Assembly (NCBI GenBank): GCA_002269645.1
Contig: NIVC01003290.1
Coordinates: 1 to 49,622, forward strand
Source: Macrostomum lignano
Taxonomy: Eukaryota
DNA length: 49,622 bases
Direction of reading: 5' to 3'
Below the pieces are notes generated by a model. The model did not search any database. It saw only the letters and a list, made by a program, of their open reading frames with translations, and was not told the DNA's origin. Of the stretch, positions 6,355-32,560 are shown piece after piece. Numbering within the stretch: the stretch's first letter is position 1; each line of letters opens with the position of its first letter. The translations under genes were made by a program, and so were the position numbers.

Positions 6355-9300
6355 CTAATAGTAGGAGGCGTTGCGCCAGTAGGCGGGGTTGGGCCGGCCG
6401 TAGCGGGGCGGCAGCCGCTCCGTGTCGTAGCCGAGGCCCTCCAGCATTGGCGCCAGGCGGGGCGCGGCCAGGGCGAACTCTGGCGACATGCCACGCGCCC
6501 AGGCCGCCAGGCTGGCCAGGTACAGCGGCTGGCGCACCTGATCGGAGCTGCGCTCGGTGTCTGAGAGGCGCACCTGGCGTCCGACCTCCAGCCAGGGCGA
6601 CAGCATCGCCGGCTCCGATGGCAGGCCGAGGAATTCGGACACCCGGCCGACCCAGAGCGGCGGGTCCAAGACCAGGTCCTCGTAGCGGACCGCCAGACAG
6701 CGGGACCCCAGCTCCTGACACTGCCGGTACATCACCGACACCTGAGGGTCAGAGAAAAATGTCAGAAACGTTTTGACAGCCAATTTGCATTGTCGGCAAC
6801 TACTGACACAATTGACACGATCATACATTGCGAGCTAATACCCTACAGCTACTGACACAATTGACACGATCATACATTGCGAGCGAATACCCTACAGCTA
6901 CTGACACAATTGACACGATCATACATTGCGAGCGAATACCCTACAGCTACTGACACAATTGACACGATCATACATTGCGAGCTAATACCCTACAGCTACT
7001 GACACAATCGACACGATCATACATTGCGAGCGAATACCCTACAGCTACTGACACAATTGACACGATCATACATTGCGAGCTAATACCCTACAGCTACTGA
7101 CACAATTGACACGATCATACATTGCGAGCTAATACCCTACAGCTACTGACACAATTGACACGATCATACATTGCGAGCGAATACCCTACAGCTACTGACA
7201 CAATTGACACGATCATACATTGCGAGCGAATACCCTACAGCTACTGACACAATTGACACGATCATACATTGCGAGCTAATACCCTACAGCTACTGACACA
7301 ATTGACACGATCATACATTGCGAGCTAATACCCTACAGCTACTGACACAATCGACACGATCATACATTGCGAGCTAATACCCTACAGCTACTGACACAAT
7401 TGACACGATCATACATTGCGAGCTAATACCCTACAGCTACTGACACAATTGACACGATCATACATTGCGAGCTAATACCCTACAGCTACTGACACAATCG
7501 ACACGATCATACATTGCGAGCTAATACCCTACAGCTACTGACACAATCGACACGATCATACATTGCGAGCTAATACCCTACAGCTACTGACACAATTGAC
7601 ACGATCATACATTGCGAGCTAATACCCTACAGCTACTGACACAATTGACACGATCATACATTGCGAGCTAATACCCTACAGCTACTGACACAATTGACAC
7701 GATCATACATTGCGAGCTAATACCCTACAGCTACTGACACAATTGACACGATCATACATTGCGAGCTAATACCCTACAGCTACTGACACAATTGACACGA
7801 TCATACATTGCGAGCTAATACCCTACAGCTACTGACACAATTGACACGATCATACATTGCGAGCTAATACCCTACAGCTACTGACACAATTGACACGATC
7901 ATACATTGCGAGCTAATACCCTACAGCTACTGACACAATTGACACGATCATACATTGCGAGCTAATACCCTACAGCTACTGACACAATTGACACGATCAT
8001 ACATTGCGAGCTAATACCCTACAGCTACTGACACAATTGACACGATCATACATTGCGAGCGAATACCCTACAGCTACTGACACAATTGACACGATCATAC
8101 ATTGCGAGCTAATACCCTACAGCTACTGACACAATTGACACGATCATACATTGCGAGCGAATACCCTACAGCTACTGACACAATTGACACGATCATACAT
8201 TGCGAGCTAATACCCTACAGCTACTGACACAATTGACACGATCATACATTGCGAGCGAATACCCTACAGCTACTGACACAATTGACACGATCATACATTG
8301 CGAGCTAATACCCTACAGCTACTGACACAATTGACACGATCATACATTGCGAGCTAATACCCTACAGCTACTGACACAATTGACACGATCATACATTGCG
8401 AGCTAATACCCTACAGCTACTGACACAATTGACACGATCATACATTGCGAGCGAATACCCTACAGCTACTGACACAATTGACACGATCATACATTGCGAG
8501 CTAATACCCTACAGCTACTGACACAATCGACACGATCATACATTGCGAGCTAATACCCTACAGCTACTGACACAATTGACACGATCATACATTGCGAGCT
8601 AATACCCTACAGCTACTGACACAATTGACACGATCATACATTGCGAGCTAATACCCTACAGCTACTGACACAATTGACACGATCATACATTGCGAGCTAA
8701 TACCCTACAGCTACTGACACAATTGACACGATCATACATTGCGAGCTAATACCCTACAGCTACTGACACAATTGACACGATCATACATTGCGAGCTAATA
8801 CCCTACAGTTTTGGCTCAGCACCCCATCGGGCACTTCAACAAACCTGGGCATTCCACCTGGCCAGGCAGTCCATGGGCCGGTTGAGATCAAACCCGGTGA
8901 TGCGGATCTTCCTGCTGATAGCCGAGTGAACGAAGGCGCGTCCATCCCGCAGCATGAGGATGAACTTAGCGCTGGGAAACAGTCGGCCGAGCAGGCGCGA
9001 GTGGGCCATGATGTAGGGGTCCTTGGCGCAGAGGCGGCGTGACGGCGGCCCATTGCGCATGAGAATCTGCACGGCGAGTTTTGGTGGTCGAAGACCCGTT
9101 TTCATAACAATGCACAAGCGAGATAAGAACACCCCCCTCCCCTACTACGTGTTTGGCACCTCTATCCAAAGCGAATTCACAAGTCAATTCAGCCAAAAAA
9201 CCTTGAAAAGTCCTCTAAATTCTGGCTCTGTGCCCTCCTAAGGGACGGGAAGCAGCAAGTGTTAGAGGCCGATCTCGAATTCTTGAAAAGCATGAATTGG

Positions 9301-10893
9301 ATAAATAGGTTTGCTTTTTACCACAGACAAAAACTCTGTGGTAAAGCCTCCAGCTTTTGTCGTTTCATGACCCAGTATTAAAGTAGTCCCTGGCACCCCG
9401 CCAGCTGAATTTTTGCCATTGGAAAGGTGCCTTACTTAGTCTGTTCCCGCCGCAGCCTCACCTGCATGATGAAGGCGGCAGTGGCGGCCTCCAGAGGGCG
9501 GCCCAAAATGCCGGCCGCCCTCAGCCGCTGCGACTCGAGCTTCTCGGTCTCCCACCGGGTCAGCAGTTGCAGCAGGCGCGGCACAACGCGAGTCTCCACG
9601 CCGCAGCGCACAGCGGAGTGCGCGTCAAGGATGGTCCGCATGAGGGTGGTCCCGCTGCGGGGCATGCCGCCTATGAAGACGAACGGGTGATCCGCGGTCA
9701 CCGAGTAAACCACCTGGCATGGGGGAGCGCTGACAGTCACTGCATGCTGGCAAATGAGCAAATGTATCAAAATATGGCACAGCTCAGTCAGCAGGGACAC
9801 AGCTCGGTCAGTAGGGACACAGCTCAGTCAGCAGGGACACAGCTCAGTCAGCAGGGACACAGCTCGGTCAGTAGGGACACAGCTCAGTCAGCAGGGACAC
9901 AGCTCAGTCAGCAGGGACACAGCTCAGGCAGCAGGGACACAGCTCAGTCAGCAGGGACACAGCTTGGTCAGCAGGTACACAGCTCAGTCAGCAGGTACAC
10001 AGCTCAGTCAGCAGGTACACAGCTCGGTCAGTAGGGACACAGCTCGGTCAGTAGGGACACAGCTCAGTCAGCAGGGACACAGCTCAGTCAGCAGGGACAC
10101 AGCTCAGTCAGCAGGACACAGCTCGGTCAGTAGGGACACAGCTCAGTCAGCAGGGACACAGCTCAGTCAGCAGGGACACAGCTCAGGCAGCAGGGACACA
10201 GCTCAGTCAGCAGGGACACAGCTTGGTCAGCAGGTACACAGCTCAGTCAGCAGGTACACAGCTCAGTCAGCAGGGACACAGCTCAGTCAGCAGGGACACA
10301 GCTTGGTCAGCAGGGACACAGCTTGGTCAGCAGGTACACAGCTCAGTCAGCAGGGACACAGCTTGGTCAGCAGGGACACAGCTTGGTCAGCAGGTACACA
10401 GCTTGGTCAGCAGGGACACAGCTTGGTCAGCAGGTACACAGCTTGGTCAGCAGGGACACAGCTCAGTCAGCAGGGACACAGCTTGGTCAGCAGGTACACA
10501 GCTTGGTCAGCAGGTACACAGCTTGGTCAGCAGGGACACAGCTCAGTCAGCAGGTACACAGCTTGGTCAGCAGGGACACAGCTTGGTCAGCAGGTACACA
10601 GCTTGGTCAGCAGGGACACAGCTCAGTCAGCAGGTACACAGCTTGGTCAGCAGGGACACAGCTCAGCCTACACAACAATAGTGTGAATCGCAACAATTAT
10701 AGAAGAGTCTCACAGTCTGGTTGGCGTCTTGCAGCTGCTCGGTGATGGAGAGACTGGGCTGGCAGGGGGCAAAGGGTCCCCAGCCCAGCCAGTACATGGT
10801 CAAGGCGCACAGGCCGCTCAGACAGGCCACGACTGATCCCCTGCGCTTCGGCCGATGCCAGAAACAGCGGAGCCAGTGGCAGTGGGTTGTCAT
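6355..10893 (-). CDS. TPST: Protein-tyrosine sulfotransferase, complete, 4 coding exons, 346 aa
   Basis: Exons 10893-10714, 9713-9462, 9066-8845, 6741-6355, all phase 0 and GT-AG. N-terminal signal anchor (SVVACLSGLCALTMYWLGW), 5'-PSB motif FIGGMPRSGTTLMR, CGVETRVVPRLL, LCAKDP, FPSAKFILMLRDGRAFVHSAISRK (3'-PB), YEDLVLDP, SSDQVRQPLY. Confidence 0.97.
6806..8807. repeat. 49-bp intronic minisatellite, about 41 near-identical copies
   Basis: Unit ctacagctactgacacaattgacacgatcatacattgcgagctaatacc. It fills TPST intron 6742-8844. Confidence 0.99.
9779..10667. repeat. 20-bp intronic minisatellite, about 44 copies
   Basis: Unit cagctcagtcagcagggaca with variants (cttgg, ggta). It fills TPST intron 9714-10713. 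Confidence 0.97.
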
Positions 10894-12452: not shown

Positions 12453-15400
12453 TCAGGACCCAAGCTCTCCCCTGACAGTCTTGACGGGCTGTCGCGAAGT
12501 GATGACGGCGGTGACGATCAGAATGGCGCCGAAGAAGGAGAACAGCAGCAGCACGCCGGCGAAGGTGGCCAGGAATCCCTCGCCGCCGATGTAGCGAGTT
12601 AGCAGCGGGGAGATGCGCGCCAGCGAGCCGTTGTTGGGCTTCGGCTGCAGGCCCAGCAGCTGGCAGGCCAGCGGGTAAAAGTCCACCGACTCCAGAGGCA
12701 GGTCCACCACAGCTCCGGCGGCCTTAAAGTCGGGGCCCCTGGCCACCCAGAGCGGCCGCATGTCTTCGGTATCGGCCGAGTAGCCGCTGACGCCCAGGGG
12801 CAGCGGGGCGCCGGCGCTGAGCCGCAGCAGCCAGGGCGGATTGGCGCGCGCATAGACAGGTGGGAGGCGCCTGCGGCAGCCGGAAAGGCGCAGCTCTGAA
12901 GGCAGGTGGGTGACGTCCCAAACGCTGAGTTCGGTCTTGGATTTGGCCAGGCGGTTTATCAGGTCGGCTGGCTGGTGACCAGCCTTTGGCCACAGCTGTG
13001 CCTGCGCACCAGGGGGCAAGTTCAGCCGGTGCTCGAACCAGTCAGCTGGGAGCAGCGAGTTAAGCTCGAGCACCTGAGATAAGATTTCAGCAAAGCGAGT
13101 ATAAAAACTAAGTAAACTCAAGGCAATTCGGCCTTTAATGTGCATAGGCAGTGTACCCCGTTCCCGATTATCATTCCCCGAGGAAAGATGCTGATGGGGA
13201 ATGATGCTGAGGGGGAATGATGCTGGGGGAATGATGCTGGGGGAATGATGCTGAGGGGAATGGTGCTATAATGGCACTCAGCTCAGACACTGACTTGGAT
13301 ATTGGTGAAGTCAGGGGCAAGGCTGTAATGGCACTCAGCTCAGACACTGCATGGACTGGGAGGCTGATTTCGAGGATCCCAGAGACTGTGAAGTTTCAAT
13401 GTGTGAGATACCGAACAGTGCCAAAAATGAAGCCAGTCGGGATGCGCTCGATGCAGGTGCTCACCTTGGAGGAGTCCACAGCGGCCATGCCGTGATCAGC
13501 CATGACCACCAGATTGACGGAGTCCAGCATCCCGAGCTGTCGAAGGCCGCTTAGCAGCCGGCCCAGATGCCCGTCCAGCTCCACCAGTTTTTCGCCTACT
13601 TCCTTGCTGACTGGGCCGTGAGCTCTCGCGGTGTCACCGGGCTCGGTAAAGTACATCAGGGCGAAGCTGATCTTGCCATGTGTGCCCGGCTTCGCCATCA
13701 GGTCAATCAGAAGCTGCACCTGGGCGGCCGGGTTGCTTGATGTGCCAATCTGGAGGCCGGCGGGGATCGGGAATGACTCAGTACTCAAATCTATACCAGC
13801 ATCTGTGCGCTTCTTTCAGAAGTCTAAGAAGCTGCAGAGCCGGGAAACAGTTTTGCTTTGCGATCGAAGGCTGCTTGAAACTTAGGCCAATCTACTTCTA
13901 CATGTACCGGCAGTGACAGACCAATAAAACAATGACAAGCATCACAGAACTTTCTCAGATTGGTGAGTCATCCCTTTTACGAAAATATTTTGCAGTGCAA
14001 TAAAATCCCCTGTGTATATATATAACTAAATTACCCTAACCCAAACTGTGAATAAAGACTACATTTTTAGCCTTATGTTTACCGTATTCTTCCAAATTGT
14101 TCGAATGGATCATTTAGGCTCTTTCAAAATAAGCCTTTATTCAATTCAAACTAATTATTAAGTTCCTATCAGTAGTAGTGTATGAGCATTTAAACATAAC
14201 TCACAACAGAGATAATCCATCATTCTTCGAATATTCTGTACTGGCACTGCCCAGTCTGCAATCAGACACTAACAGCACTGCCCAGTCTGCAATCAGACAC
14301 TCACAGCACTGTCCAGTCTGCAATCAGACACTCACAGCACTGCCCAGTCTGCAATCAGACACTCGCTATCGGCTCAGCACTGTCCAGTCTGCAATCAGAC
14401 ACTCACAGCACTGCCCAGTCTGCAATCAGACACTCACAGCACTGCCCAGTCTGCAATCAGACACTCACAGCACTGTCCAGTCTGCAATCAGACACTCACA
14501 GCACTGTCCAGTCTGCAATCAGACACTCGCTATCAGCTCAGCACTGCCCAGTCTGCAATCAGACACTCACAGCACTGTCCAGTCTGCAATCAGACACTCA
14601 CAGCACTGCCCAGTCTGCAATCAGACACTCACAGCACTGCCCAGTCTGCAATCAGACACTCACAGCACTGTCCAGTCTGCAATCAGACACTCACAGCACT
14701 GTCGAGTCTGCAATCAGACACTCGCTATCAGCTCAGCACTGCCCAGTCTGCAATCAGACACTCACTATCGGCTCAGCACTGCCCAGTCTGCAATCAGACA
14801 CTCGCTATCAGCTCAGCACTGCCCAGTCTGCAATCAGACACTCACTATCGGCTCAGCACTGCCCAGTCTGCAATCAGACACTCACAGCACTGTCCAGTCC
14901 GCAATCAGACACTCACAGCACTGTCCAGTCTGCAATCAGACACTCGCTATCAGCTCAGCACTGCCCAGTCTGCAATCAGACACTCACTATCGGCTCAGCA
15001 CTGCCCAGTCTGCAATCAGACACTCACAGCACTGTCCAGTCTGCAATCAGACACTCACAGCACTGCCCAGTCTGCAATCAGACACTCGCTATCGGCTCAG
15101 CACTGTCCAGTCTGCAATCAGACACTCACAGCACTGCCCAGTCTGCAATCAGACACTCACAGCACTGTCCAGTCTGCAATCAGACACTCACAGCACTGCC
15201 CAGTCTGCAATCAGACACTCACAGCACTGTCCAGTCTGCAATCAGACACTCACAGCACTGTCCAGTCTGCAATCAGACACTCGCTATCAGCTCAGCACTG
15301 CCCAGTCTGCAATCAGACACTCACAGCACTGTCCAGTCTGCAATCAGACACTCGCTATCAGCTCAGCACTGCCCAGTCTGCAATCAGACACTCACTATCG

Positions 15401-16864
15401 GCTCAGCACTGCCCAGTCTGCAATCAGACACTCACAGCACTGCCCAGTCTGCAATCAGACACTCACAGCACTGCCCAGTCTGCAATCAGACACTCGCTAT
15501 CGGCTCAGCACTGTCCAGTCTGCAATCAGACACTCACAGCACTGCCCAGTCTGCAATCAGACACTCACAGCACTGCCCAGTCTGCAATCAGACACTCACA
15601 GCACTGCCCAGTCTGCAATCAGACACTCACTATCGGCTCAGCACTGCCCAGTCTGCAATCAGACACTCACAGCACTGTCCAGTCTGCAATCAGACACTCA
15701 CAGCACTGCCCAGTCTGCAATCAGACACTCACAGCACTGTCCAGTCTGCAATCAGACACTCACAGCACTGTCCAGTCTGCAATCAGACACTCGCTATCAG
15801 CTCAGCACTGCCCAGTCTGCAATCAGACACTCACTATCGGCTCAGCACTGCCCAGTCTGCAATCAGACACTCGCTATCAGCTCAGCACTGCTCAGTCTGC
15901 AATCAGACACTCACTATCAGCTCAGCACTGTCCAGTCTGCAATCAGACACTCGCTATCGGCTCAGCACTGTCCAGTCTGCAATCAGACACTCGCTATCAG
16001 CTCAGCACTGCCCAGTCTGCAATCAGACACTCGCTATCGGCTCAGCACTGTCCAGTCTGCAATCAGACACTCACTATCAGCTCAGCACTGTCCAGTCTGC
16101 AATCAGACACTCACTATCAGCTAAGCACTGTCCAGTCTGCAATCAGACACTCGCTATCAGCTCAGCACTGTCCAGTCTGCAATCAGACACTCACAGCACT
16201 GCCCAGTCTGCAATCAGACACTCACAGCACTGCCCAGTCTGCAATCAGACACTGATTATCTGTTTGAGCCCACCTGTTGCGGGGAGCCAGAGGAGCCGCC
16301 GAACAGCAGGGCTTTGCCGGGCAACAGCAAAAGCGACTTGCCGCCTTGCCGCTGGTTGGCGAGCCACAGAGGCTCCGGGAAGCCCTTGTAGAACCAAGCG
16401 GCATCGCTGAGGCTGGTGAGGTTTGTCTTGTGAAAGACCACGCCAGGCCTGTCGCTGTCCAGAAAGGAGTCGAAGGGGATGCAGTGGCTCTCCGGATACA
16501 AGCCAGTCAGCATGCTCCAGTAGTTTGGCATGGAGTCAGTTGGGTTCACGCTGCGCATTTTGCTGGCTCGAACTCCCTGCTTGAGCAGCGTTTCAAAACT
16601 AGACAAATTGACGCCGCGAGACTTGTACACATCGGGGAGGTCATAGCGGAGTCCATTGAAAATGAGCACGATTAGGGGCGATGTTGAACCGCTTTCGTGC
16701 TCCATGGAATGGTCATGGTGCATGGAGTGGCCGTCATGCTGGACACCTGGGTCAGCAGGAACATGCATATTATGTTGCATGTGATCATGCATGTCTTCTG
16801 CTTGGCTTCCAGGACATGCAGAGACGACAAGCAGTGCCAGCAGCCACCAAATCCAGCTAGTCAT
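12453..16864 (-). CDS. ENPP4/5-like (nucleotide pyrophosphatase/phosphodiesterase family) type I membrane protein, probably a pseudo-enzyme
   Basis: Exons 16864-16274, candidate 14235-14205, 13790 (or 13802)-13465, 13073-12453. Signal peptide MTSWIWWLLALLVVSACPGSQA. Motifs: LIFNGLRYD, PTDSMPNYWSMLTGLYPESH, EPLWLANQRQG, YFTEP..HGP, VVMADHGM, DMRPLWVARGPDFK, ESVDFYPLACQLLGLQPKPNNGSL. C-terminal TM segment FLATFAGVLLLFSFFGAILIVTAVI. Confidence 0.92.
13188..13350. repeat. short intronic repeats: (ggggaatgatgct)-type run plus a 24-bp direct repeat
   Basis: About 5-6 copies of ggggaatgatgctg at 13188-13265, and taatggcactcagctcagacactg at about 13269 and 13327. Confidence 0.8.
14244..16252. repeat. 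31/40-bp two-variant intronic minisatellite, about 2 kb
   Basis: Units cactgcccagtctgcaatcagacactcacag (31) and cactgcccagtctgcaatcagacactcgctatcggctcag (40), interspersed, in ENPP intron 1. Confidence 0.98.
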
Positions 16865-18706
16865 TGTCTGGCCCTAACACAATACACCATGCAGTGAATT
16901 GTTAAAAATATTGAAATCTAAGTGTAAGTTTAGTCTAGTCTAGTACAACATGGACAATAGAGGACAAGAAGATAGGGCTGCTTTTGATAAGTGCAAATAT
17001 TTGTCTTAAGAGCAGCTAATAGACCTTGTTGCCAGTTATGAATAGCTTAAGTATATATAGCTTTAGCAATAGTATATGGTCTACTACACAGTGATTGAAC
17101 AGTTTGAATAATGAACAGGTATTCCTATGACAAAGGCAGCAAAAAACAAATGTCTAATGTCTAAATTCATAAGTCTATTTGATATCTATACATAGTTTAT
17201 GCTAAGGATGACTCACCAATGGCCTTAAAAAGCATTATATATTGTGTGATATAACTTATTGGCTATAAAAATAATAAGCTATTTAAAAAGATATATTTTC
17301 AATTAAACTTGCAATCTTTAATAGCAAATACAATTTCCTTACAATTTAATCTTCTTACAATCTCTTTACAATTTAATTATGCATTTTCTTGTTATTTCTA
17401 ATGCCTCTTGCTTTCATTTGTTATTCTCTAACCTTTAAAATCAATGAATAATAAATCTTTAAAATGAGATACATTTAATGTTTGAGAGACATCAAAGATT
17501 AAAAAAGGAAAAAAACTCTTTGAATAAACTATATATAGTTTTTGGCATTATATTTTTGTTATTGCTTAAGGAAATGATATATAATTAAAGCAAAAAGCCT
17601 TAAATAAAAGCTAGTTATCTAGCCTAAAAAGATAATAGCATCCCCTTTATCCTTTGAGCTTAGTATCAAAGCTTTTATTTAAATTAGAAAAGCTTCAAAA
17701 TAAGCATTGACATTAAAAAGAAATAAGAAGTATGCAACAATTATACAAAAAAAGCTTTTAACTAAGTTGGGTCTATAAAGAATAAAGATTTCAATATATA
17801 TTTTCTAAGACTAAGAGTTCTAATCTAAGAGTTATTTCTATATACTAGACTATTTCTAAAAATCAAATAAATTTTAAAATTCTAGCAACAAAACTCGTCT
17901 TTTTGCATTGTGTCCTAGTAATACCATATTTTCTATCTTAGAAGATATTAGTAAATTGAAACTTTGAAAGTAATACTAGGCCCCTATCTTTTAAAGGTTA
18001 AAGCATATAATATTTTTATATTGCTTTGCACTAGATAACAACAAAACAACAACAGAACAAAAACAACAACAAAATACGGTGTCAGGGTGCTTAGAATACT
18101 GACAGGGCGCGCCTTTAGGACAGAAAATATAAATGATCTATCCTCGACGACCACACATTAGATAAGATAAAGTCAAGAAAAAATATTCCAAGTTCTGTTG
18201 ATTATCCAATTAACATGTAAGGCTGCCCGGTCATGCTACATCTACGCAGGCCTACACATAACGCAAATATATATTAATTTTAGAGCTGTTCTATCTAATC
18301 TATTTCGTCACATGTTAAATCATGTGTAAACTATGTCTATGATATCATATTATCATGTTAATCAATTTGTAGTTTAATTAAAAAGAAGCCTTTGATGCGA
18401 AATGGTGGTTAGACTCATAATAGTAAATAAATTTCACTATTTACTATAGCACTCAAGATATTATTTATAAGCTTTTCTCGTCTTTTGCATTTATCAATGA
18501 ATTTAACATCTTTTTGGAGCATTTTTACGTTTTTATTTATTTTACTTCTTGAACACAAGAGTCCGTAGTTGCAAACTTTCAATTCTGCGAGCTTGGTTCT
18601 TTTTATCGAAAAAATACAAGGGCGAAATTCTTTCTTTATTCTCCATTAATTCAAAACCTTGTTAACTATTTCAAGTAAAATCAACTTTCGAGTTTAAAAT
18701 CCTAAA

Positions 18707-20082
18707 ATGGCCACGCCTGCTCCGGTTAAAAAGGTTTTTAAGATTCGCATGTCTCGGGGAGAAACTGACGACTCTGACATTGATTTAGAGAGAGTTGAGG
18801 ATTATGTTTTATTTGATGAGCGTGAGAATGCAATCCGCTTTGGTGAAATATATAAGATGAAGAAAACAATTTTTATTTTTCTTCGTGTAAGTATTTCAAC
18901 TTTCTGAATATTTTAAAGTGTTTTTTTAAATGTTTGTGATCTAGCATCTAACACTAATATATAATAGATGGCGCAACATTTCAATTGACTTACAAACTAC
19001 TCTGTAAATACTACATTGAGAATAATAAAATGTTTACTTTATCATGCTTGCTATCTGTGAGGATTTGTATTTGTATCATATTTTTGTTAGTGAAGATTAT
19101 AAGTCAATAATATAGGGAATTTTATAATTAGTTAGATAGCAAGTTAATAATTGGTTTTGGTATATGAAAATAAGATGTAGGATTTTTATATATTTATCAT
19201 GCTTTGAACTTCATTTTAGCATCCGCAGTGCTTCACTGTGAAGGAGTACATGGATGATTTGTGTCGTGTTTCTACCGAAATGCTGGAGGAAGTAAATGTT
19301 CAGTTGGCTATAATTCTGCCATCCAAATCGGAAACAGCATTTGTAAGTTTGTGCCACAATAATAACGGCCTATTGGCTGCTGTTAAAATTTCAGCTGCTC
19401 GTTAGTACCCGAGAGTCTCTCGTGCTAATGTATATTTATACTCGTAGATAATGTCAAATGTAAATTCAACTAAAATAAAACCATATATAGCTCATAGTTT
19501 GCTGATCTCAGGGATGTACTCTTTTGATGGCCCACTAAAAGCTTTTGGAGGTAAAACATTTCAATAATATGAATGAAAATTATTGAACTACCACAAATAA
19601 CTGTAGACATTTCGCACCGAGTTCATGCTTGGCCACTCTGTCTACTGTGATCCTGAGATGGCATTGTACAAGGAGCTGGGCTTCACTCTGGTGACCAGCA
19701 CTGGAGGTAAGTGTTTCCCTTAGAATTACCATGGGAAGTCTTCATAAAATAGAATTCATTCTCTTTTAATTGCTATTTGGCTAAATGCTTTGCTGATATT
19801 TGGTGCTTTCTCTCCACAGAGACCCTTGCAAGCAGCAAGCACGTGAAGTCAGGCTGGGTGTCTGGTGTCCTGCAGAGCACCTACCGCGCAATGTGGTACC
19901 AGGATTTCTCGGCCGATATGTACCAAAACGGTGGCTGTCTGGTGGCTGGTCCTGGCCGCCTGCTGCACTTTTTCCACCGGGACAAGTGCCTCTTTGACCA
20001 GGTATCCATCAACAAGGTGCTCGAGTTCGTAGGCGCTGGAGTCATCAGCTTTCCCAAGGATGCGCGGGTCATCACTGTGTGA
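18707..20082 (+). CDS. PRXL2C: Peroxiredoxin-like 2C / AAED1-like (AhpC-TSA_2 domain), complete, 221 aa
   Basis: Exons 18707-18886, 19220-19342, 19607-19706, 19820-20082, phases consistent. Motifs: IFIFLRHPQCFTVKEYMDDL, VYCDPEMALYKELG, SKHVKS..GVLQS..RA, QNGGCLVAGPG, HRDK..DQVSINKVL. Confidence 0.93.
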
Positions 20083-22249: not shown

Positions 22250-25200
22250 TCAGGACCTTACAACCTGAGGGAGTTGCAGGGCCGACTGCTGGTGTAACAG
22301 CGAAGGAGGCGGCGGGTCAGGCGGTCGCACGGGAGGCGGCTGGGCAACAAGCAGTAGGGCTCGAAGTACGGAGCTCGGGGGCAGCCCGAGTATGGCGGAG
22401 TACAGACGGATGAATTCGCCGACCTCGGTCTGTGAGCGGCTGGCCAGCCAGCGCAACGAGCGGTGCCGACCTCCTGCTGCGGCTTCGGCGGCTGCGGCAG
22501 CTGCTGGAGCATCATGGGCGACGGCGGCCTCCACGGCGGCAGTCTCGGCTGCCTCCGACGGGAGACGGTCGGCGTTGCAGAATGCACAGTAAAAGGCCAG
22601 CGCCATCAGCAGGTCCGGGCTGCGGCCCACCAGCACAGCCAAGTCGGCGGCAGCGCCCTGCTGAGGCCCCACGGCGGCGTCGCTTCGTCGCAGAAAGGCG
22701 AGGGCGCCAAACGCGAGCGCCAGACCGCGGCTGTTAAGGCGCAGCAGGGCGAGGCGGTGGCGCGGGCTGAGCAGGCAGATGCTGGGCAGGGCGGACAGCA
22801 AACTGCCTGCCAGTTGTAGGCCGCCGGTGCTGCCATTGTAGAGCCCGGTGATGTCCCTGGTACCGCCAGCGTCGCTGTCCTCGGCAGCGCAGAGTCGGTA
22901 AAAATCGGCCAGGGCCTCACGCACGAAGCCGAGCATCTCCTCGGAGGACATTGGAAGCTGCTGCTGTTGTGGGGGGCCGCCGTCTTCACTGCCGGTGCCG
23001 CTGATCCAGTAGGTGAAGCTGGCCGGCGGGTGCCGGGGCCTATTTGAGGGAGAGGTCTAAATATCCTGAATTTGAGCAAAATTGCTAAAACTTGCAGTGT
23101 TGGCAAAGTGCAAAACGGGGGGTGAAAGAGATGGCCCTTGTAGTTCAGCCTATCACAGCATGCACAGAGGAACTCAAATCCATTTGCAAATTGCTCTATA
23201 AGGCTGCCGCAAGCCTATTTCTTAGCCGTGGCAAACTCTGCTTAACTCTCAGGATTGGGCTTAGCTCCAGTCGATTTCAGCATTCAGTGGTTCAAAATTT
23301 TAAAAAAGATCTGCGATCTACTTGGGCATCGGTTTTTACAGTTGCACATGAGTGAGTTAGGGCTGCATGAGAGAATAAATGCTAAGCGCAATGTGTCCAG
23401 TATTTACCCAATCGCTGGCAAGCAGCCTGGAAGCGGGGGCCTCTGATTGGTCAGCTCAGTCAGCTGACAGCCGGCACCCAGCCAGAGGCTGCTTGTGGCA
23501 ACCGCTGCAACTGCGGAAACGGTAGCAGTCGATGGAGGCGGTGGTGGCGGCGGCGGCGGAGGCAGCTGCGGCGGCGGCAGCGGCTGCATCAGCGGTGGCT
23601 TGGGCTGCCAGTAAAGAAATCCGGGCCGGTTCTCCTTGCGCCCTCGGTAATTGGCCCGGGTCACCAGCTTGCTGAGCGCTGCGGGCGGGGATACGGCATC
23701 GGGCATCGGGACTCAGGGTGAAATGAGGGGCTATTAGCGCCTCTAGTCGATTCCAGACTGAAAAGAGCAGCTCTGTCTTTCTCCAGAATTCCCCAGCTTA
23801 GAGTGAAGTTTCTCCACTTGAACGCCAGCGATAGGCAAAAATCGGGAGCCTGAGTGGCGTTAAAGCAAAGTATTTTTGACTAGTTTTATGTGTTCGGATA
23901 AAGTTGGTAAAAGCAATTATTGCACAAAAGTATTAACTGCCCGACTGTGTTCCTCGAAAAATTACTGCCACTTTCACTTCCCATTTTCATTAGTTTGATG
24001 AGTTAATTATTCCATGTTTTTAAGACGCTACTTGCCTAATTACCCAGAGCGCACATGAGGCAATGGGGCAGGGACTCTATACTGTCGGAACTTTCTGCTC
24101 GTATATCAGACTGGAGGTGGCCATGAGCGACTGAGATGCTCATCAGCCAGCTACGTACGCGTGATGAGCTCCGGCTTCATCCCTGCGGCAAGGCAGCGCT
24201 TCAGCCGACAGGCGGGGCAGCGCTTGCGCAGCCGGCCGGTGGTTGGACAGTTGCCCGCCATCCTGCAGAGTCGCAGCTGCCACGGCGTGGTTGGGTGGGG
24301 CGGAGATGTGCGGATTGCACGGCTTGTTCTGATCCAAGGAGAACGGATGAGGCGAGGTTTCATTGCATTTAATGGAGCTGTGCAAAATTAGTGGCGTTTT
24401 CAGTTAAAACTGGCAGGGCCAGTGCGAAGGTACTTGAGGAGCTGGTTGTATCAGTGCGAAGGTACTTGAGGAGCTGGTTGTATCAGTGCGGAAGGTGCTT
24501 GAGGAACTGCATGGTTGTATCAGTGCGAAGGTGCTTGAGGAACTGCATGGTTGTATCAGTGCGAAGGTGCTTGAGGAACTGCATGGTTGTATCAGTGCGA
24601 AGGTGCTTGAGGAACTGCATGGTTGTATCAGTGCGAAGGTGCTTGAGGAACTGCATGGTTGTATTAGTGCGGAAGGTGCTTGAGGAACTGCATGGTTGTA
24701 TCAGTGCGAAGGTGCTTGAGGAACTGCATGGTTGTATCAGTGCGAAGGTGCTTGAGGAACTGCATGGTTGTATTAGTGCGAAAGGTGCTTGAGGAACTGG
24801 TTGTCGGTGCAAAGGTACTTGAGGAGCTGGTTGTATCGGTGCGTAGGTGCTTGAGGAAGTGGTTAGTTCAAAGGTGCTTGAGGAACTGCATGGTTGTATC
24901 AGTGCGAAGGTGCTTGAGGAACGGGTTGTATCAGTGCGAAGGTGCCTGAGGAACGGGTTGTATCGGTGCGAAGGTGCTTGAGGAACTGGTTGTCAGTGCA
25001 AAGGTACTTGAGGAACTGCATTATTGTATCAGTGCGAAGGTGCTTGAGGAACTGGTTGTGTCAGTTCGAAGGTGCTTGAGGAACTGGTTGTCGGTGCAAA
25101 GGTACTTGAGGAACTGCATTATTGTATCAGTGCGAAGGTGCTTGAGGAACTGGTTGTGTCAGTTCGAAGGTGCTTGAGGAACTGGTTGTCGGTGCAAAGG

Positions 25201-26350
25201 TACTTGAGGAACTGCATTATTGTATCAGTGCGAAGGTGCTTGAGGAACTGGTTGTGTCAGTTCGAAGGTGCTTGAGGAACTGGTTGTCGGTGCAAAGGTA
25301 CTTGAGGAACTGCATTATTGTATCATTGCGAAGGTGCTTGAGGAACTGGTTGTGTCAGTTCGAAGGTGCTTGAGGAACTGGTTGTATCAGTGCGAAGTTG
25401 CTTAGGGAACTGGTTGTATCAGTGCAAAGTTGCTTAGGGAACTGGTTGTATCAGTGCAAAGTTGCTTAGGGAACTGGTTGTATCAGTGCGAAGTTGCTTA
25501 GGGAACTGGTTGTATCAGTGCAAAGTTGCTTAGGGAACTGGTTGTATCAGTGCAAAGTTGCTTAGGGAACTGGTTGTATCAGTGCAAAGTTGCTTAGGGA
25601 ACTTGTTGTATCAGTGCGAAGTTGCTTAGGGAACTGGTTGTATCAGTGCGAAGTTGCTTAGGGAACTGGTTGTATCAGTGCGAAGTTGCTTAGGGAACTG
25701 GTTGTATCAGTGCAAAGTTGCTTAGGGAACTGGTTGTATCAGTGCGAAGTTGCTTAGGGAACTGGTTGTACAACAAGTGGGGTTAAAAGTGCTGTGCCAA
25801 CCCTCGAATCGAACTGCAGTCGCCAGGCACTGCGTCGGAAAAAAGCTTTGCAGCTCTCGCAGCTGAGCACGTCAAAGTTGTACCCTGAGGCGTGTGACTG
25901 GCAGATGGCGCACAGCGGGGTTCCCCCGTTGTTGGCCAGCTTCCTGCGGCGACGCTGAACGGCGGCAATTGTGTGAGACGGCAGTGCCAGAGGCTCCGGC
26001 TTGCCCGACAGAGGCAACAGCGGCAGCGGGGGTGGCAGAGGCGGCTTCGGCCGATGATGCTGATGATGCTGGTGCTGGTGCTGGTGGTGGCCGGGCAGCT
26101 GGCTGTGCTGGTGCGGCCCACTGTAGATCGAATTCTGCGGCGTGGCGACACTGCCGTCTCCGATTCCTGCGCTTCCGCCTCTACGGGACATTCCTGGCCA
26201 AGCAAATACCGTAGCCGCCGCGGCCTGGTGCAGAGAAGACACCGCCGTCGTGAACCGGTGCATCTGCAACTGGGATGGAATTGCCAGACAGCTTTCCTGC
26301 GAAACTTGCCCTCCGGCGGCTTTCACCGGCAGCCTTTGACCAGGGTGCAT
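22250..26350 (-). CDS. Nuclear hormone receptor, NR1J (HR96/DAF-12)-like DNA-binding domain with a divergent ligand-binding domain; 5' end uncertain
   Basis: Exons ~26350?-25802, 24276-24159, 23678-23408, 23039-~22250, with phases 0/1/2 that join correctly. ZF1 CAICQSHASGYNFDVLSCESCKAFFRR (P-box ESCKA). ZF2 CRMAGNCPTTGRLRKRCPACRLKRCLAAGM. LBD-like segment LLSALPSICLLSPRHRLALLR. Confidence 0.9.
24419..25770. repeat. compound 30/32/36-bp minisatellite in the intron between the two zinc fingers
   Basis: 36-mer tatcagtgcgaaggtgcttgaggaactgcatggttg, then a 98-bp three-unit higher-order block, then 32-mer tatcagtgcgaagttgcttagggaactggttg. Confidence 0.97.
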
Positions 26351-28610: not shown

Positions 28611-29918
28611 GTCAGGCTGAGACTGTGGGCCAAGCTCTCTGTCCCTGCAACGTCTCTGCACCCAGGCGCTGAGCTGCCACAGGTCAGGCTGAGACTGTGG
28701 GCCAAGCTCTCTGTCCCTGCAACGTCTCTGCACCCAGGCGCTGAGCTGCCACAGGTCAGGCTGAGACTGTGGGCCAAGCTCTCTGTCCCTGCAACGTCTC
28801 TGCACCCAGGCGCTGAGCTGCCACAGGTCAGGCTGAGACTGTGGGCCAAGCTCTCTGTCCCTGCAACGTCTCTGCACCCAGGCGCTGAGCTGCCACAGGT
28901 CAGGCTGAGACTGTGGGCCAAGCTCTCTGTCCCTGCAACGTCTCTGCACCCAGGCGCTGAGCTGCCACAGGTCAGGCTGAGACTGTGGGCCAAGCTCTCT
29001 GTCCCTGCAACGTCTCTGCATCCAGGCGCTGAGCTGTCACAGGTCAGGCTGAGACTGTGAGCCAAGCTCTCTGTCCCTGCAACGTCTCTGCATCCAGGCG
29101 CTGAGCTGTCACAGGTCAGGCTGAGACTGTGAGCCAAGCTCTCTGTCCCTGCAACGTCTCTGCATCCAGGCGCTGAGCTGTCACAGGTCAGGCTGAGACT
29201 GTGAGCCAAGCTCTCTGTCCCTGCAACGTCTCTGCACCCAGGCGCTGAGCTGCCACAGGTCAGGCTGAGACTGTGGGCCAAGCTCTCTGTCCCTGCAACG
29301 TCTCTGCACCCAGGCGCTGAGCTGCCACAGGTCAGGCTGAGACTGTGGGCCAAGCTCTCTGTCCCTGCAACGTCTCTGCACCCAGGCGCTGAGCTGCCAC
29401 AGGTCAGGCTGAGACTGTGGGCCAAGCTCTCTGTCCCTGCAACGTCTCTGCACCCAGGCGCTGAGCTGCCACAGGTCAGGCTGAGACTGTGGGCCAAGCT
29501 CTCTGTCCCTGCAACGTCTCTGCACCCAGGCGCTGAGCTGCCACAGGTCAGGCTGAGACTGTGGGCCAAGCTCTCTGTCCCTGCAACGTCTCTGCACCAA
29601 TGCGCTGAGCTGCCACAGGTCAGGCTGAGACTGTGGGCCAAGCTCTCTGTCCCTGCAACGTCTCTGCATCCAGGCGCTGAGCTGTCACAGGTCAGGCTGA
29701 GACTGTGAGCCAAGCTCTCTGTCCCTGCAACGTCTCTGCATCCAGGCGCTGAGCTGTCACAGGTCAGGCTGAGACTGTGAGCCAAGCTCTCTGTCCCTGC
29801 AACGTCTCTGCATCCAGGCGCTGAGCTGCCACAGGTCAGGCTGAGACTGTGGGCCAAGCTCTCTGTCCCTGCAACGTCTCTGCATCCAGGCGCTGAGCTG
29901 TCACCTGTGGGCCAAGCT
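28611..29918. repeat. 72-bp tandem array, 18 copies
   Basis: Unit gtcaggctgagactgtgggccaagctctctgtccctgcaacgtctctgcacccaggcgctgagctgccacag. Copies start at 28611, 28683 ... 29835. Confidence 0.99.
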
Positions 29919-31334: not shown

Positions 31335-32560
31335 CGAAATCACCTATATTGCACCTGCCTGCACTCGCACCTGATCGTGGACGCGGGATCGACCTGCCTG
31401 GGCGCCATCGTGGCGCAGGTGCAGCGTGACGGCAGCTCGAGGCCGGTTGCATGCGCCAGCCGGACCCTCTCCGGCGTCGAGCGGCGATACTCACAGACCG
31501 AGAAGGAGCCGCTCGCTGTGAAGCTCCGCTGCCTGAAGTTCGAGTACAACCTGCATGGATCGCCCGAGTTCTCAGTGCTCTCCGATCACAAGCCGCTGAC
31601 GGCCTTGGGTCCGCGGCCGTCTTCCACGAGTCGAGCGAATGGTGCTGAGGATCCAGCACTTAGTGTTCAAGGTCGAGTACCAGCCGGGAGCCTCCAATGC
31701 TGCAGACGTACTCAGCAGGCAGCCCCTAAGCGCGCACAACAGAAACTTTGGATGGGAGGCCTACTTCAATGAGGTGGCGCGCAGACGGCTGTGTCGATAG
31801 CGCTGACGCTCGAGGACATCTGCAAGAGCTCTGCCAGCGACCGTCGAATTCAGACGGCGATAGCGGCGACGCAAAGCGGCCAGTGGGATCGCTCCAACGT
31901 GGAGATACGGTTGCTCCACGCGCTGCGAGAGGATCTCGAGCTGTCTGCGGTGGACGGAGTCCTCCTTTGGCATCAGCGAATCGTAGTGCTAGCTGGTCTG
32001 CGGCAGCAGATGCTCGAACTGGCGCACCAAGGGCACCAGTGATCGCAGAAGACAATCACCAGACTCGGCACGAAGGTCTGGTGGCCGAGGATGGCAACTC
32101 AAGCGGAGGAGTTCGTCAGTCGATGCCGCAGCTGTGCCGTCACGTCGCACAAGCTAGTCATCCGGGCCACACCTCTGCAGTCGACGCCGATATCCGCGAG
32201 CGTCTGGCTGTCGATCGGCGCCGACTTCGTGGGACCCATCAACATGCTGCTGGTGTGCGTGGACCGCTACTCGAGATTCCCGGAGGTGCAGCTTATGCAG
32301 ACGTACCGGCCGAGGCAGATTCCCCGCCTACGAGAGATGTTCGCTATCTGCTGGATCACGCAGGAGCTCGTGACAGACAATGAGCCGCTCTTCTCGTCCA
32401 AGGAGTTTGGCCGATTTCTGGCAAGCTACGGGATAAAGCACCGCCTCATCACGCCCTATTACCCTATCCTGCAGCCAACGGCATGACAGAGCGACTCAAC
32501 CGCTCCATCCACAAAGTCGTGCGAGCAGCCAGCCGTCTATGGCACAGACTGGGGGCAGAC
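31335..32560 (+). mobile_element. degenerate Ty3/gypsy LTR-retrotransposon pol fragment (RT-RNase H, integrase)
   Basis: DA..CLGAIVAQ..RPVACASRTLSGVERRYSQTEKEPLA, VLSDHKPL, LAHQGHQ, KVWWPRM..FVSRCRSC (integrase zinc finger), GADFVGP, VDRYSRFPEV, ELVTDNEPLFSSKEF, TPYYP, ERLNRSI. Contains stops and frameshifts; no LTRs seen. Confidence 0.93.

What the first reader, a model, noticed from the sequence alone, without database searches (positions are those of the whole stretch)
12453..16864. ENPP-family pseudo-enzyme: four of six metal ligands replaced
Established ENPP motifs are SFDGFR, TKT*FPNH, EPDxxGH, SDHG and GxHGYD. Seen here: IFNGLR (D to N), TDSMPNY (nucleophile T to S), EPGDTAR (D to G, H to R), GVSGYS (H to S), and HGIVxN to HCIPFD. 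Only ADHG is intact, so all three ligands of one zinc site are gone. The fold-level motifs, signal peptide and TM anchor are preserved and the ORF is open. Inference: a catalytically dead cell-surface NPP repurposed for binding or scaffolding.
Basis: partly seen in the sequence, partly recalled or inferred. Interest (0 to 1): 0.72.

Follow-up and report, generated by a model that had tools for sequence, protein, structure and literature searches.

The report
Zinc-site-degenerate ENPP5-like flatworm membrane protein
A flatworm (Macrostomum lignano) gene encodes a cell-surface-type relative of the ENPP4/5 phosphodiesterases that has lost one of its two catalytic zinc sites yet is transcribed and kept by selection, so it is most likely a non-catalytic or re-tooled "pseudo-enzyme"; this is interesting but not unusual for enzyme families.

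Summary
The window is a complete 49,622-bp contig of Macrostomum lignano. On the minus strand, three exons (16864-16274, 13749-13465, 13073-12453) encode a 498-aa protein identical to GenBank PAA52164.1, a "hypothetical protein".

It is a clear ENPP phosphodiesterase domain: Pfam PF01663 at 4e-45, and an AF2 model (pLDDT 88) that matches ENPP5/ENPP4 with TM 0.87-0.89. It has a signal peptide, a disordered His/Met-rich stretch, a C-terminal TM helix and a short tail.

At the seven catalytic positions it reads N-S-G-R-D-H-S, where canonical enzymes read D-T-D-H-D-H-H. All three Zn1 ligands are gone. The Zn2 site is kept in altered form (Asn, Ser, Asp, His).

All four M. lignano copies carry the same seven residues, and so does a 69%-identical transcript from another, unidentified species. 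dN/dS against that transcript is 0.25 overall and 0.09 in the active-site motifs. The changes are therefore neither sequencing errors nor decay.

The best reading is a selectively maintained, non-canonical ENPP ectodomain, probably a non-hydrolytic binder. A mono-metal, Arg-assisted enzyme is not excluded.

Similar degenerate ENPPs turned up in ticks, corals, a sea urchin and flukes. My literature searches found no description of any of them.

The parts
16274..16864 (-). Exon 1 (codons 1-197): start codon, signal peptide, His/Met-rich stretch and the first half of the PDE domain, including IFNGLR (N70 = 16655-16657), TDSMPNY (S111 = 16532-16534) and ESHCIPFD.
   Evidence: Read directly. Donor is CAG|gtgggc. 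The spliced product is identical to PAA52164.1.
16799..16864 (-). Signal peptide (residues 1-22, MTSWIWWLLALLVVSACPGSQA).
   Evidence: Hydrophobic N-terminus read from the sequence; AF2 helix 4-15. The cleavage site is inferred, not predicted with a dedicated tool.
16691..16798 (-). His/Met-rich acidic stretch (residues 23-58: 10 His, 5 Met and 8 Asp/Glu in 36 residues), predicted to be disordered.
   Evidence: Composition. pLDDT is below 50 for residues 19-57. Partly conserved in the orthologue transcript (GHSMHEGHSMEHE). Absent from the canonical M. lignano paralogue P0128.
13750..16273 (-). Intron 1 (2,524 bp, GT...AG), holding a 31-nt (102-nt higher-order) minisatellite at 14244-16253.
   Evidence: The 648-aa plus-strand 'ORF' at 14178-16124 is an artefact of this repeat.
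13465..13749 (-). Exon 2 (codons 198-292): EPGDTARAHGP (G235 = 13636-13638, R239 = 13624-13626) and ADHGM (D282 = 13495-13497, H283 = 13492-13494).
   Evidence: Acceptor is ccggcctccag|ATT and donor is AAG|gtgagc. The acceptor agrees with the GenBank models and with the intron-less transcript L001.
13074..13464 (-). Intron 2 (391 bp, GT...AG).
12453..13073 (-). Exon 3 (codons 293-498 plus the stop codon): the rest of the PDE domain with GVSGYS (S388 = 12786-12788), the PNNGS sequon, the TM helix and a 13-residue tail.
12495..12584 (-). C-terminal transmembrane helix (residues about 456-485), followed by the conserved tail RQPVKTVRGELGS.
   Evidence: Kyte-Doolittle 19-residue windows reach 2.67. 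AF2 helix 456-485. TM plus tail omega is 0.21 against the orthologue.

Best explanation
The gene (Mlig020893.g2) is a transcribed, selectively maintained paralogue of the flatworm ENPP4/5-like ecto-phosphodiesterases. It is made as a type I membrane glycoprotein with these parts: signal peptide, disordered His/Met-rich segment, PDE-fold ectodomain, one TM helix and a short cytosolic tail.

Shown:
- The fold is kept.
- The Zn1 site is abolished (D235G, H239R, H388S).
- The Zn2 half-site is altered (D70N, T111S; D282 and H283 kept).
- These replacement residues are themselves conserved through synonymous change.
- The former active-site motifs are the most constrained part of the protein.

Inferred:
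- The canonical two-zinc in-line phosphodiester hydrolysis of ENPPs cannot operate.
- The groove is retained as a binding pocket, probably for a phosphate-bearing or anionic ligand. Candidate contacts are R239, N114 and the residual N/S/D/H cluster.
- The ligand is held rather than hydrolysed. The conserved TM helix and tail couple the ectodomain to membrane partners or to trafficking.

The gene arose by duplication of a canonical ENPP within the macrostomid lineage. A phase of accelerated change was followed by renewed purifying selection.
For: Family and fold:
- PF01663 at 3.9e-45.
- ENPP5 5ven at 7e-36 and ENPP4 4lqy at 3e-35.
- AF2 pLDDT 87.9 and pTM 0.82.
- Foldseek top hits are ENPP5/3/6/4 with TMt 0.84-0.89.

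Ligand loss:
- Pattern NSGRDHS against DTDHDHH in 242 of 284 aligned domains.
- Ligand definitions come from PMC8808174.

Not errors or decay:
- Four M. lignano copies share the pattern.
- The GenBank model is RNA-seq-derived and identical to my model.
- The intron-less contig L001 from another species has the same seven residues.

Selection:
- NG86 omega is 0.25 at dS 0.88.
- Omega is 0.087 in the five active-site motif windows and 0.315 in the rest of the PDE domain.
- N70 (AAT/AAC), G235 (GGT/GGA), R239 (AGA/CGC) and D282 (GAT/GAC) are kept through synonymous differences.

No conserved substitute Asp: D236 is Ala in the orthologue.

Origin:
- A canonical paralogue, P0128 (M. lignano A0A1I8INJ6, 42% identity, DTDHDH-), exists.
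- The degenerate clade has a longer branch: mean distance 1.71-1.75 against 1.23-1.60 for canonical flatworm ENPPs.
Against: - No activity, metal-content or localisation data exist.
- The Zn2-type half-site plus a Ser nucleophile could still support chemistry.
- Strong conservation of the motifs could reflect their structural role in the fold rather than ligand binding.
- Selection was measured on one divergent pair, with dS near 0.9, or 1.5 in the motif subset, which is close to saturation.
- The species of the orthologue contig is unknown.
- The binding partner is entirely hypothetical.
Confidence: 0.6

Rival explanations
1. It is a re-tooled mono-metal enzyme. The protein keeps one metal at the Zn2-equivalent site (N70, S111, D282, H283) with Ser111 as nucleophile. 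The guanidinium of R239 takes over the charge and leaving-group stabilisation normally given by Zn1. It would then still catalyse a phosphoryl, sulfuryl or phosphonate transfer, perhaps on a new substrate. Mono-metal members of the alkaline-phosphatase superfamily, such as sulfatases and phosphoethanolamine transferases, work this way (my own knowledge of that superfamily, not tested here).
For: - D282 and H283 are invariant, and N114, the phosphate-contacting Asn, is kept.
- Ser is the natural nucleophile of ENPP6.
- Seven canonical-looking relatives have the DSDHDHH pattern.
- The replacement residues and the active-site motifs are under the strongest constraint (omega 0.087).
- The pair Gly/Ala plus Arg at the Zn1 Asp/His positions appears in three lineages that never group together in 200 NJ bootstraps: Macrostomum, ticks and Diadema.
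Against: - Asn is a weaker ligand than Asp.
- The second-shell residues also changed (G128C, N132D, H115Y).
- The tick lineage with the same G/A-R pair has also lost the nucleophile (Pro) and the first Asp (Gln). There the pair goes with a plainly dead site.
- D to G, D to N and H to R are each a single transition, so recurrence may reflect mutational ease.
- Only PF01663 was hit, with no sulfatase-type model.
Confidence: 0.25
2. It is a metal-handling surface protein. The main function lies in the extracellular His/Met-rich, acidic N-terminal segment, which would bind Zn, Cu or Ni for sensing, buffering or uptake. The degenerate PDE domain would serve only as a stable stalk.
For: - The segment has 10 His and 5 Met in 36 residues, against 9 His in the other 462.
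- The GHSMH...HSMEHE repeat is conserved in the orthologue.
- The segment is absent from the canonical paralogue and is predicted to be disordered and exposed.
- His/Met-rich ectodomains bind copper in Ctr1-type transporters (my own knowledge, a resemblance only).
Against: - Only about 14 residues of the segment are covered by the orthologue contig, so its conservation is poorly sampled.
- This does not explain why the former active-site motifs are the most constrained part of the protein.
- No transporter or partner is known.
Confidence: 0.1
3. It is a decaying pseudogene or an annotation or assembly artefact. The substitutions would then be neutral decay of a redundant duplicate in a highly duplicated genome.
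For: - The M. lignano DV1 genome is highly redundant.
- One of the four copies (P0335, Mlig026797.g4) has a frame-shifted C-terminus.
- Omega between near-identical copies is 0.43, based on only 16 differences.
Against: - Three copies have intact 495-505-aa frames with proper GT-AG splicing.
- The gene model is transcript-derived.
- The orthologue transcript at dS 0.88 has an intact frame and omega 0.25.
- The AF2 model is confident.
Confidence: 0.03

Closest known systems
Vertebrate ENPP5 and ENPP4 (PDB 5ven/5veo/5vem, 4lqy): single-PDE-domain type I membrane ecto-phosphodiesterases
   Same: They are the best sequence and fold matches. The architecture is the same: signal peptide, PDE domain alone, C-terminal TM anchor and short tail. 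The GxxGY, DHG, PN and PNNGS motif framework is shared.
   Different: Identity is 23-27%. Canonical ENPP4/5 have all seven catalytic residues and two (ENPP5: three) zinc ions. Here only D282 and H283 are unchanged, the nucleophile is Ser, and Zn1 has no ligands. The flatworm protein has an extra His/Met-rich N-terminal segment.
Flatworm ENPP5-like ectoenzymes, e.g. Schistosoma mansoni SmNPP5 (PMC7549896), and the canonical flatworm relatives P0126, P0166 (Cichlidogyrus), P0129 (Paragonimus) and P0128 (M. lignano)
   Same: The NJ tree places the Macrostomum protein with flatworm ENPP4/5-like sequences (weak support of 64/200). They share a Met/Leu after the nucleophile (T-x-[TS]-[ML]-PN).
   Different: Those proteins keep DTDHDHH, and SmNPP5 is an active tegumental enzyme according to that paper's title and abstract. 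The Macrostomum gene is a faster-evolving, ligand-deficient paralogue. I did not align SmNPP5 itself.
Other ligand-deficient ENPP-like proteins found here: tick 'ENPP6-like' (P0081/P0262, QP[AG]RDHH), Acropora 'ENPP4/5-like' (P0158, NSYQDHH), Diadema (P0125, DTGRDHD), Paragonimus (P0124, DTAHDHD), Saccoglossus (P0188, GTDHDHD)
   Same: All have an ENPP PDE domain with D-H of the DHG motif kept and other ligands lost. Gly/Ala plus Arg at the Zn1 Asp/His positions is shared with ticks and Diadema. Asn plus Ser at the first two positions is shared with Acropora. Each is conserved within its own lineage: hard against soft ticks at 67% identity, and several Acropora species.
   Different: They are not orthologues. 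The Arg-bearing lineages were never monophyletic in 200 bootstraps, and ticks group with Ser-nucleophile ENPP6-like enzymes in 149/200. Each lineage has lost a different subset of ligands. All are database entries named automatically after active ENPPs, and I found no published study of them.
The nuclease-like (NUC) domain of ENPP1-3
   Same: It is a precedent, within the same family, for a catalytically inactive enzyme-derived domain retained for a structural role (abstract of PMC8808174).
   Different: It has a different fold and position. In ENPP1-3 it is the accessory domain that is dead. Here the PDE domain itself is degenerate, and no SMB or NUC domains are present.

Membership tests
ENPP / type I phosphodiesterase-nucleotide pyrophosphatase (Pfam PF01663) | Significant full-length match to the PDE-domain profile | tested here: met
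   PF01663 at E 3.9e-45 and 155 bits (cut-off 23), covering residues 64-398 and profile positions 1-340 of 342.
ENPP / type I phosphodiesterase-nucleotide pyrophosphatase (Pfam PF01663) | Alkaline-phosphatase-like PDE fold superposable on solved ENPPs | tested here: met
   AF2 pLDDT 87.9. Foldseek E 2e-34 with TMt 0.87-0.89 to ENPP5 and ENPP4, and 0.85-0.87 to Xac NPP.
ENPP / type I phosphodiesterase-nucleotide pyrophosphatase (Pfam PF01663) | Seven conserved catalytic residues: Zn1 = Asp + 2 His; Zn2 = 2 Asp + His + Thr/Ser nucleophile (PMC8808174) | tested here: not met
   The pattern is N70, S111, G235, R239, D282, H283, S388. Only D282 and H283 are unchanged, plus an acceptable Ser nucleophile. 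All three Zn1 ligands are absent.
ENPP / type I phosphodiesterase-nucleotide pyrophosphatase (Pfam PF01663) | Zn-dependent phosphodiesterase/pyrophosphatase activity | not testable with these tools
   This needs a recombinant ectodomain, activity assays and a metal analysis.
ENPP4/5 subgroup | PDE domain only, with an N-terminal signal peptide and a C-terminal single TM anchor (type I) | tested here: met
   No other Pfam domain was found. A hydrophobic N-terminus and a TM helix at 456-485 are present. The best hits are ENPP5 and ENPP4. Subgroup placement by tree is weak.
ENPP1-3 subgroup | Two SMB domains plus a C-terminal nuclease-like domain | tested here: not met
   Only PF01663 was detected in the 498-aa protein.
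Pseudoenzyme (operational definition) | Clear homologue of an enzyme family that lacks residues essential for the family's catalysis | tested here: met
Pseudoenzyme (operational definition) | Expressed and retained under purifying selection (not a pseudogene) | tested here: met
   The gene model is transcript-derived. An intron-less orthologue transcript exists. Omega is 0.25 overall and 0.087 in the motifs.
Pseudoenzyme (operational definition) | Demonstrated absence of catalytic activity | not testable with these tools
   No assay was possible, and a mono-metal activity remains possible.
Mono-metal alkaline-phosphatase-superfamily enzymes (sulfatases, PEtN transferases) | Match to a sulfatase-type profile (PF00884) | tested here: not met
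   The window protein shows no PF00884 hit at E <= 0.01. Many canonical relatives do carry a secondary PF00884 annotation.

The most novel reading that the evidence does not exclude
ENPP-derived ectodomains without a Zn1 site may form a recurrent, unrecognised functional class in invertebrates. It would have arisen independently in macrostomid flatworms, ticks and sea urchins, with further variants in corals, flukes and hemichordates. An Arg at the former Zn1 histidine, with a Gly/Ala at the former Asp, would occupy the metal's place. The hydrolase would then become either a non-hydrolytic phospho-ligand receptor or a mono-metal enzyme with new chemistry.
Probability: 0.3. Interest if true: 0.6.

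Novelty: new variant of a known kind. Interest (0 to 1): 0.42.

Why it matters
ENPPs are treated as a uniformly catalytic family of seven active members. Automatic annotation names these degenerate proteins "ENPP4/5/6-like" enzymes.

This work shows that a PDE domain lacking a whole zinc site is transcribed and conserved. It also shows that several animal lineages have made similar proteins. That flags a set of mis-annotated genes and offers a natural experiment on how the alkaline-phosphatase fold tolerates loss of one metal.

M. lignano has RNAi and transgenesis, so the function can be tested. The impact is moderate. Pseudoenzymes are common, and this one is lineage-restricted with no known partner or phenotype.

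Tried and rejected
- **First gene model.** My first model used acceptor gag|TCA at 13776, giving an extra SFPIPAGLQ. I rejected it for the pyrimidine-rich acceptor at 13749, which matches the GenBank models and the orthologue transcript.
- **Bacterial-style ORFs.** The 648-aa plus-strand ORF at 14178-16124 and similar ORFs are minisatellite artefacts.
- **Alternative Zn1 ligands.** D236 is next to G235 but is Ala in the orthologue. H241 is conserved, but His is also common at that column in active enzymes (16/99). No His lies near S388.
- **Metal-site geometry.** The structure tool returns no coordinates, so distances and the orientation of R239 could not be examined.
- **More orthologues.** The word-indexed search and the exhaustive representative search found only P0001/P0332-type copies and P0002 above 43% identity. 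The age of the loss could not be bracketed, and branch-site tests were not possible.
- **Species of run SRR28338165.** It could not be identified.
- **Literature.** Searches for ENPP or alkaline-phosphatase-superfamily pseudoenzymes and for the Mlig gene ids returned nothing relevant.
- **A single ancient origin of the Arg-bearing degenerate ENPPs.** Rejected by the NJ bootstrap (0/200). Macrostomum plus ticks grouped in 21/200, which is probably long-branch attraction.
Full report
**What the window is.** The 49,622-bp window is a complete contig of the free-living flatworm Macrostomum lignano (assembly Mlig_3_7). The protein I assembled from it is identical, residue for residue, to GenBank PAA52164.1, "hypothetical protein BOX15_Mlig020893g2". 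The longest contig recorded for that entry is 49,622 bp. The sequence has the look of that genome: strongly varying G+C and many minisatellite arrays. Those arrays create long spurious ORFs in a bacterial-style ORF list.

**Anatomy of the gene.**
- The feature is a three-exon gene on the minus strand: 16864-16274, 13749-13465 and 13073-12453.
- Both introns are GT-AG and all junctions are phase 0.
- Intron 1 (2,524 bp) is mostly a 31-nt minisatellite at 14244-16253.
- My first choice of acceptor for exon 2 was replaced by the pyrimidine-rich site at 13749. That site agrees with the deposited models and with an intron-less transcript from a related species.
- The GenBank annotation of this assembly was built from RNA-seq-guided transcript assemblies (PMC5730564). 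The exact match therefore also shows that the gene is transcribed and spliced as modelled.

**The protein (498 aa).**
- Hydrophobic signal peptide, residues 1-22.
- An acidic His/Met-rich stretch, residues 23-58, with 10 His and 5 Met in 36 residues. AF2 predicts it to be disordered.
- A PDE-type domain, residues about 62-450.
- A TM helix, residues about 456-485, and a 13-residue tail.
- Three N-x-S/T sequons (86, 148, 440) lie in the predicted ectodomain.

**Checking the observation.**
- Pfam gives one domain, PF01663 (type I phosphodiesterase/nucleotide pyrophosphatase), at 3.9e-45.
- The best solved relatives are ENPP5 (7e-36), ENPP4 and then ENPP3/1/7, the bacterial Xac NPP, ENPP2 and ENPP6.
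- An AlphaFold2 model built on a 102-sequence alignment is confident (pLDDT 87.9, pTM 0.82). It matches ENPP5/ENPP4 with target-normalised TM-scores of 0.87-0.89.
- The ENPP review (PMC8808174) defines seven conserved catalytic residues. Zn1 is held by an Asp and two His. Zn2 is held by two Asp, a His and the nucleophile, which is Thr in all ENPPs except ENPP6, where it is Ser.
- At these seven columns the flatworm protein reads N70, S111, G235, R239, D282, H283, S388. The canonical pattern is D, T, D, H, D, H, H.
- Among the 99 other sequences in the alignment, the canonical residue is present in 96-99 at each column.
- Second-shell positions are also changed: H115Y, G128C and N132D.
Four of six non-nucleophile ligands are replaced and all three ligands of one zinc site are lost.

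**Errors or decay?** Neither.
- M. lignano DV1 has a highly redundant genome. Four copies of this gene are deposited, and all read NSGRDHS. One of them (Mlig026797.g4) has a frame-shifted C-terminus.
- A syntenic copy (L002) differs from the window gene by 16 substitutions.
- A 1,420-nt intron-less contig assembled from run SRR28338165 (L001; species not identifiable) encodes a 69%-identical orthologue. It carries the same seven residues, the same HC[IV]PFD motif, the same TM helix and tail, and the end of the His/Met-rich segment.
- Nei-Gojobori dN/dS against that orthologue is 0.25 at dS 0.88.
- Partitioned, the five active-site motif windows (87 codons) give omega 0.087. The rest of the PDE domain gives 0.315, and the TM plus tail gives 0.21.
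- The replacement residues themselves are kept through synonymous differences: N70 AAT/AAC, G235 GGT/GGA, R239 AGA/CGC.
- The possible substitute ligand D236 is Ala in the orthologue.
- Caveats: this is one divergent pair, the synonymous distance in the motif subset is near saturation, and those motifs are also structural elements of the fold.

**Origin.**
- An exhaustive HMMER scan of 1.84 billion representatives found 3,266 relatives. Only one 50%-identity cluster belongs with this gene. The next hits are 28-43% identical.
- Among those next hits is a canonical M. lignano ENPP fragment (P0128, UniRef A0A1I8INJ6, 42% identity). It has D, T, D, H, D, H in place and no His-rich stretch.
- In an NJ tree the degenerate pair sits on a long branch among flatworm ENPP4/5-like sequences from Paragonimus and Cichlidogyrus, with weak support (64/200).
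- Its mean distance to canonical non-flatworm ENPP4/5-like proteins is 1.71-1.75. Canonical flatworm members lie at 1.23-1.60.
- The simplest history is duplication of a canonical ENPP in the macrostomid lineage, rapid change including loss of the zinc site and gain of the His/Met-rich segment, and then renewed constraint.

**How it most likely works.**
- Shown: an ENPP fold with no Zn1 site, an altered Zn2 half-site, and strong constraint on the former active-site region and on the TM/tail.
- Inferred: the canonical two-metal mechanism cannot run. The protein is most likely a membrane-anchored, non-hydrolytic ectodomain. Its groove would still bind something, plausibly a phosphate-bearing ligand contacted by R239, N114 and the residual N/S/D/H cluster. 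The conserved TM and tail would couple it to partners or trafficking. I put this at about 0.6.
- Main rival (about 0.25): a mono-metal, Arg-assisted enzyme. The Zn2-equivalent site and a Ser nucleophile survive, and ENPP6 uses Ser.
- A role centred on metal binding by the His/Met-rich segment is possible and is not exclusive of the others (about 0.1).
- A decaying pseudogene is essentially excluded (about 0.03).
- I could not inspect the pocket, because model coordinates are not exposed.

**Wider context found on the way.** I aligned 284 ENPP domains from the two searches to one profile. Of these, 242 are fully canonical and 7 more differ only by a Ser nucleophile. A dozen are degenerate:

| Lineage | Protein(s) | Pattern | Note |
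|---|---|---|---|
| Ticks, "ENPP6-like" | P0081, P0262 | QPARDHH / QPGRDHH | Hard and soft ticks, 67% identical to each other |
| Acropora, "ENPP4/5-like" | P0158 | NSYQDHH | 60 member sequences from several species |
| Diadema | P0125 | DTGRDHD | |
| Paragonimus | P0124 | DTAHDHD | |
| Saccoglossus | P0188 | GTDHDHD | |
| Unnamed | P0011 | GTDHDHN | |

(Sources.)

- All of them keep the Asp-His of the DHG motif.
- Three lineages (Macrostomum, ticks, Diadema) share Gly/Ala at the Zn1 Asp and Arg at the Zn1 His.
- These three never form a clade in 200 NJ bootstraps. Ticks group with Ser-nucleophile ENPP6-like enzymes (149/200), and the Diadema protein is sister to a canonical sequence.
- This may mean that Arg can stand in for Zn1. 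However, D to G and H to R are single transitions, so mutational ease is an equally simple explanation. The tick proteins have also lost the nucleophile.
- Full-text searches found no paper on ENPP PDE-domain pseudoenzymes or on these genes. The library is incomplete, so this is only absence of evidence.

**Verdict.** It is a new variant within a well-known family and a well-known phenomenon. It is of moderate interest, raised somewhat by the recurrence across phyla and by the tractability of M. lignano.

Noticed in passing
window 6355-9800 (minus strand): A sulfotransferase gene lies immediately downstream of the ENPP-like gene on the same strand. It hits Pfam Sulfotransfer_3/Sulfotransfer_1, and a UniRef entry names it protein-tyrosine sulfotransferase. 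One UniRef model (P0336, 883 aa) fuses the two genes, and in a sister copy they carry ids from one transcriptional unit (Mlig026797.g6 and g8). This suggests co-transcription, possibly as a trans-spliced precursor. The same arrangement is present in the syntenic copy L002.
   Followed up: partly
P0081, P0262, P0158, P0125, P0124, P0188, P0011: Other animal lineages carry ENPP-like proteins with degenerate metal ligands: ticks, Acropora corals, Diadema sea urchin, Paragonimus flukes and Saccoglossus. All are auto-annotated as active ENPP4/5/6-like enzymes. Gly/Ala plus Arg at the Zn1 Asp/His positions recurs in three lineages that do not group together in the tree.
   Followed up: partly
window 16691-16798 (residues 23-58): A His/Met-rich acidic segment (HDHMQHNMH...HDGHSMHHDHSMEHE) is predicted to be disordered. 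It is absent from the canonical M. lignano paralogue and partly conserved in the orthologue. It is reminiscent of extracellular metal-binding tails.
   Followed up: partly
P0335 (M. lignano Mlig026797.g4): One of the four genomic copies has a frame-shifted C-terminus starting after about residue 430 and loses the TM anchor. It is either a decaying duplicate or an assembly error.
   Followed up: no
window 14244-16253, 6800-8808, 9778-10666, 24420-25770, 28611-29904 and others: Large minisatellite arrays (periods of 20-72 nt, up to 58 copies) lie in introns and between genes. They generate long fake ORFs of up to 648 aa in a six-frame scan.
   Followed up: yes
window 31377-32486 (plus strand): A fragment of an LTR-retrotransposon pol gene (RT-RNase H and integrase core domains), split over several frames and therefore probably degraded.
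   Followed up: partly
window 25754-26350 (-), 36422-36973 (-), 46963-47865 (-): These are exons of other host genes: a nuclear-receptor C4 zinc finger, a thioredoxin-domain protein and an RRM protein with a poly-Gln tract.
   Followed up: partly
window 17001-19000 and 40001-41000: Blocks of very low G+C (25-31%) stand against a background of 45-60%. Their cause was not examined.
   Followed up: no
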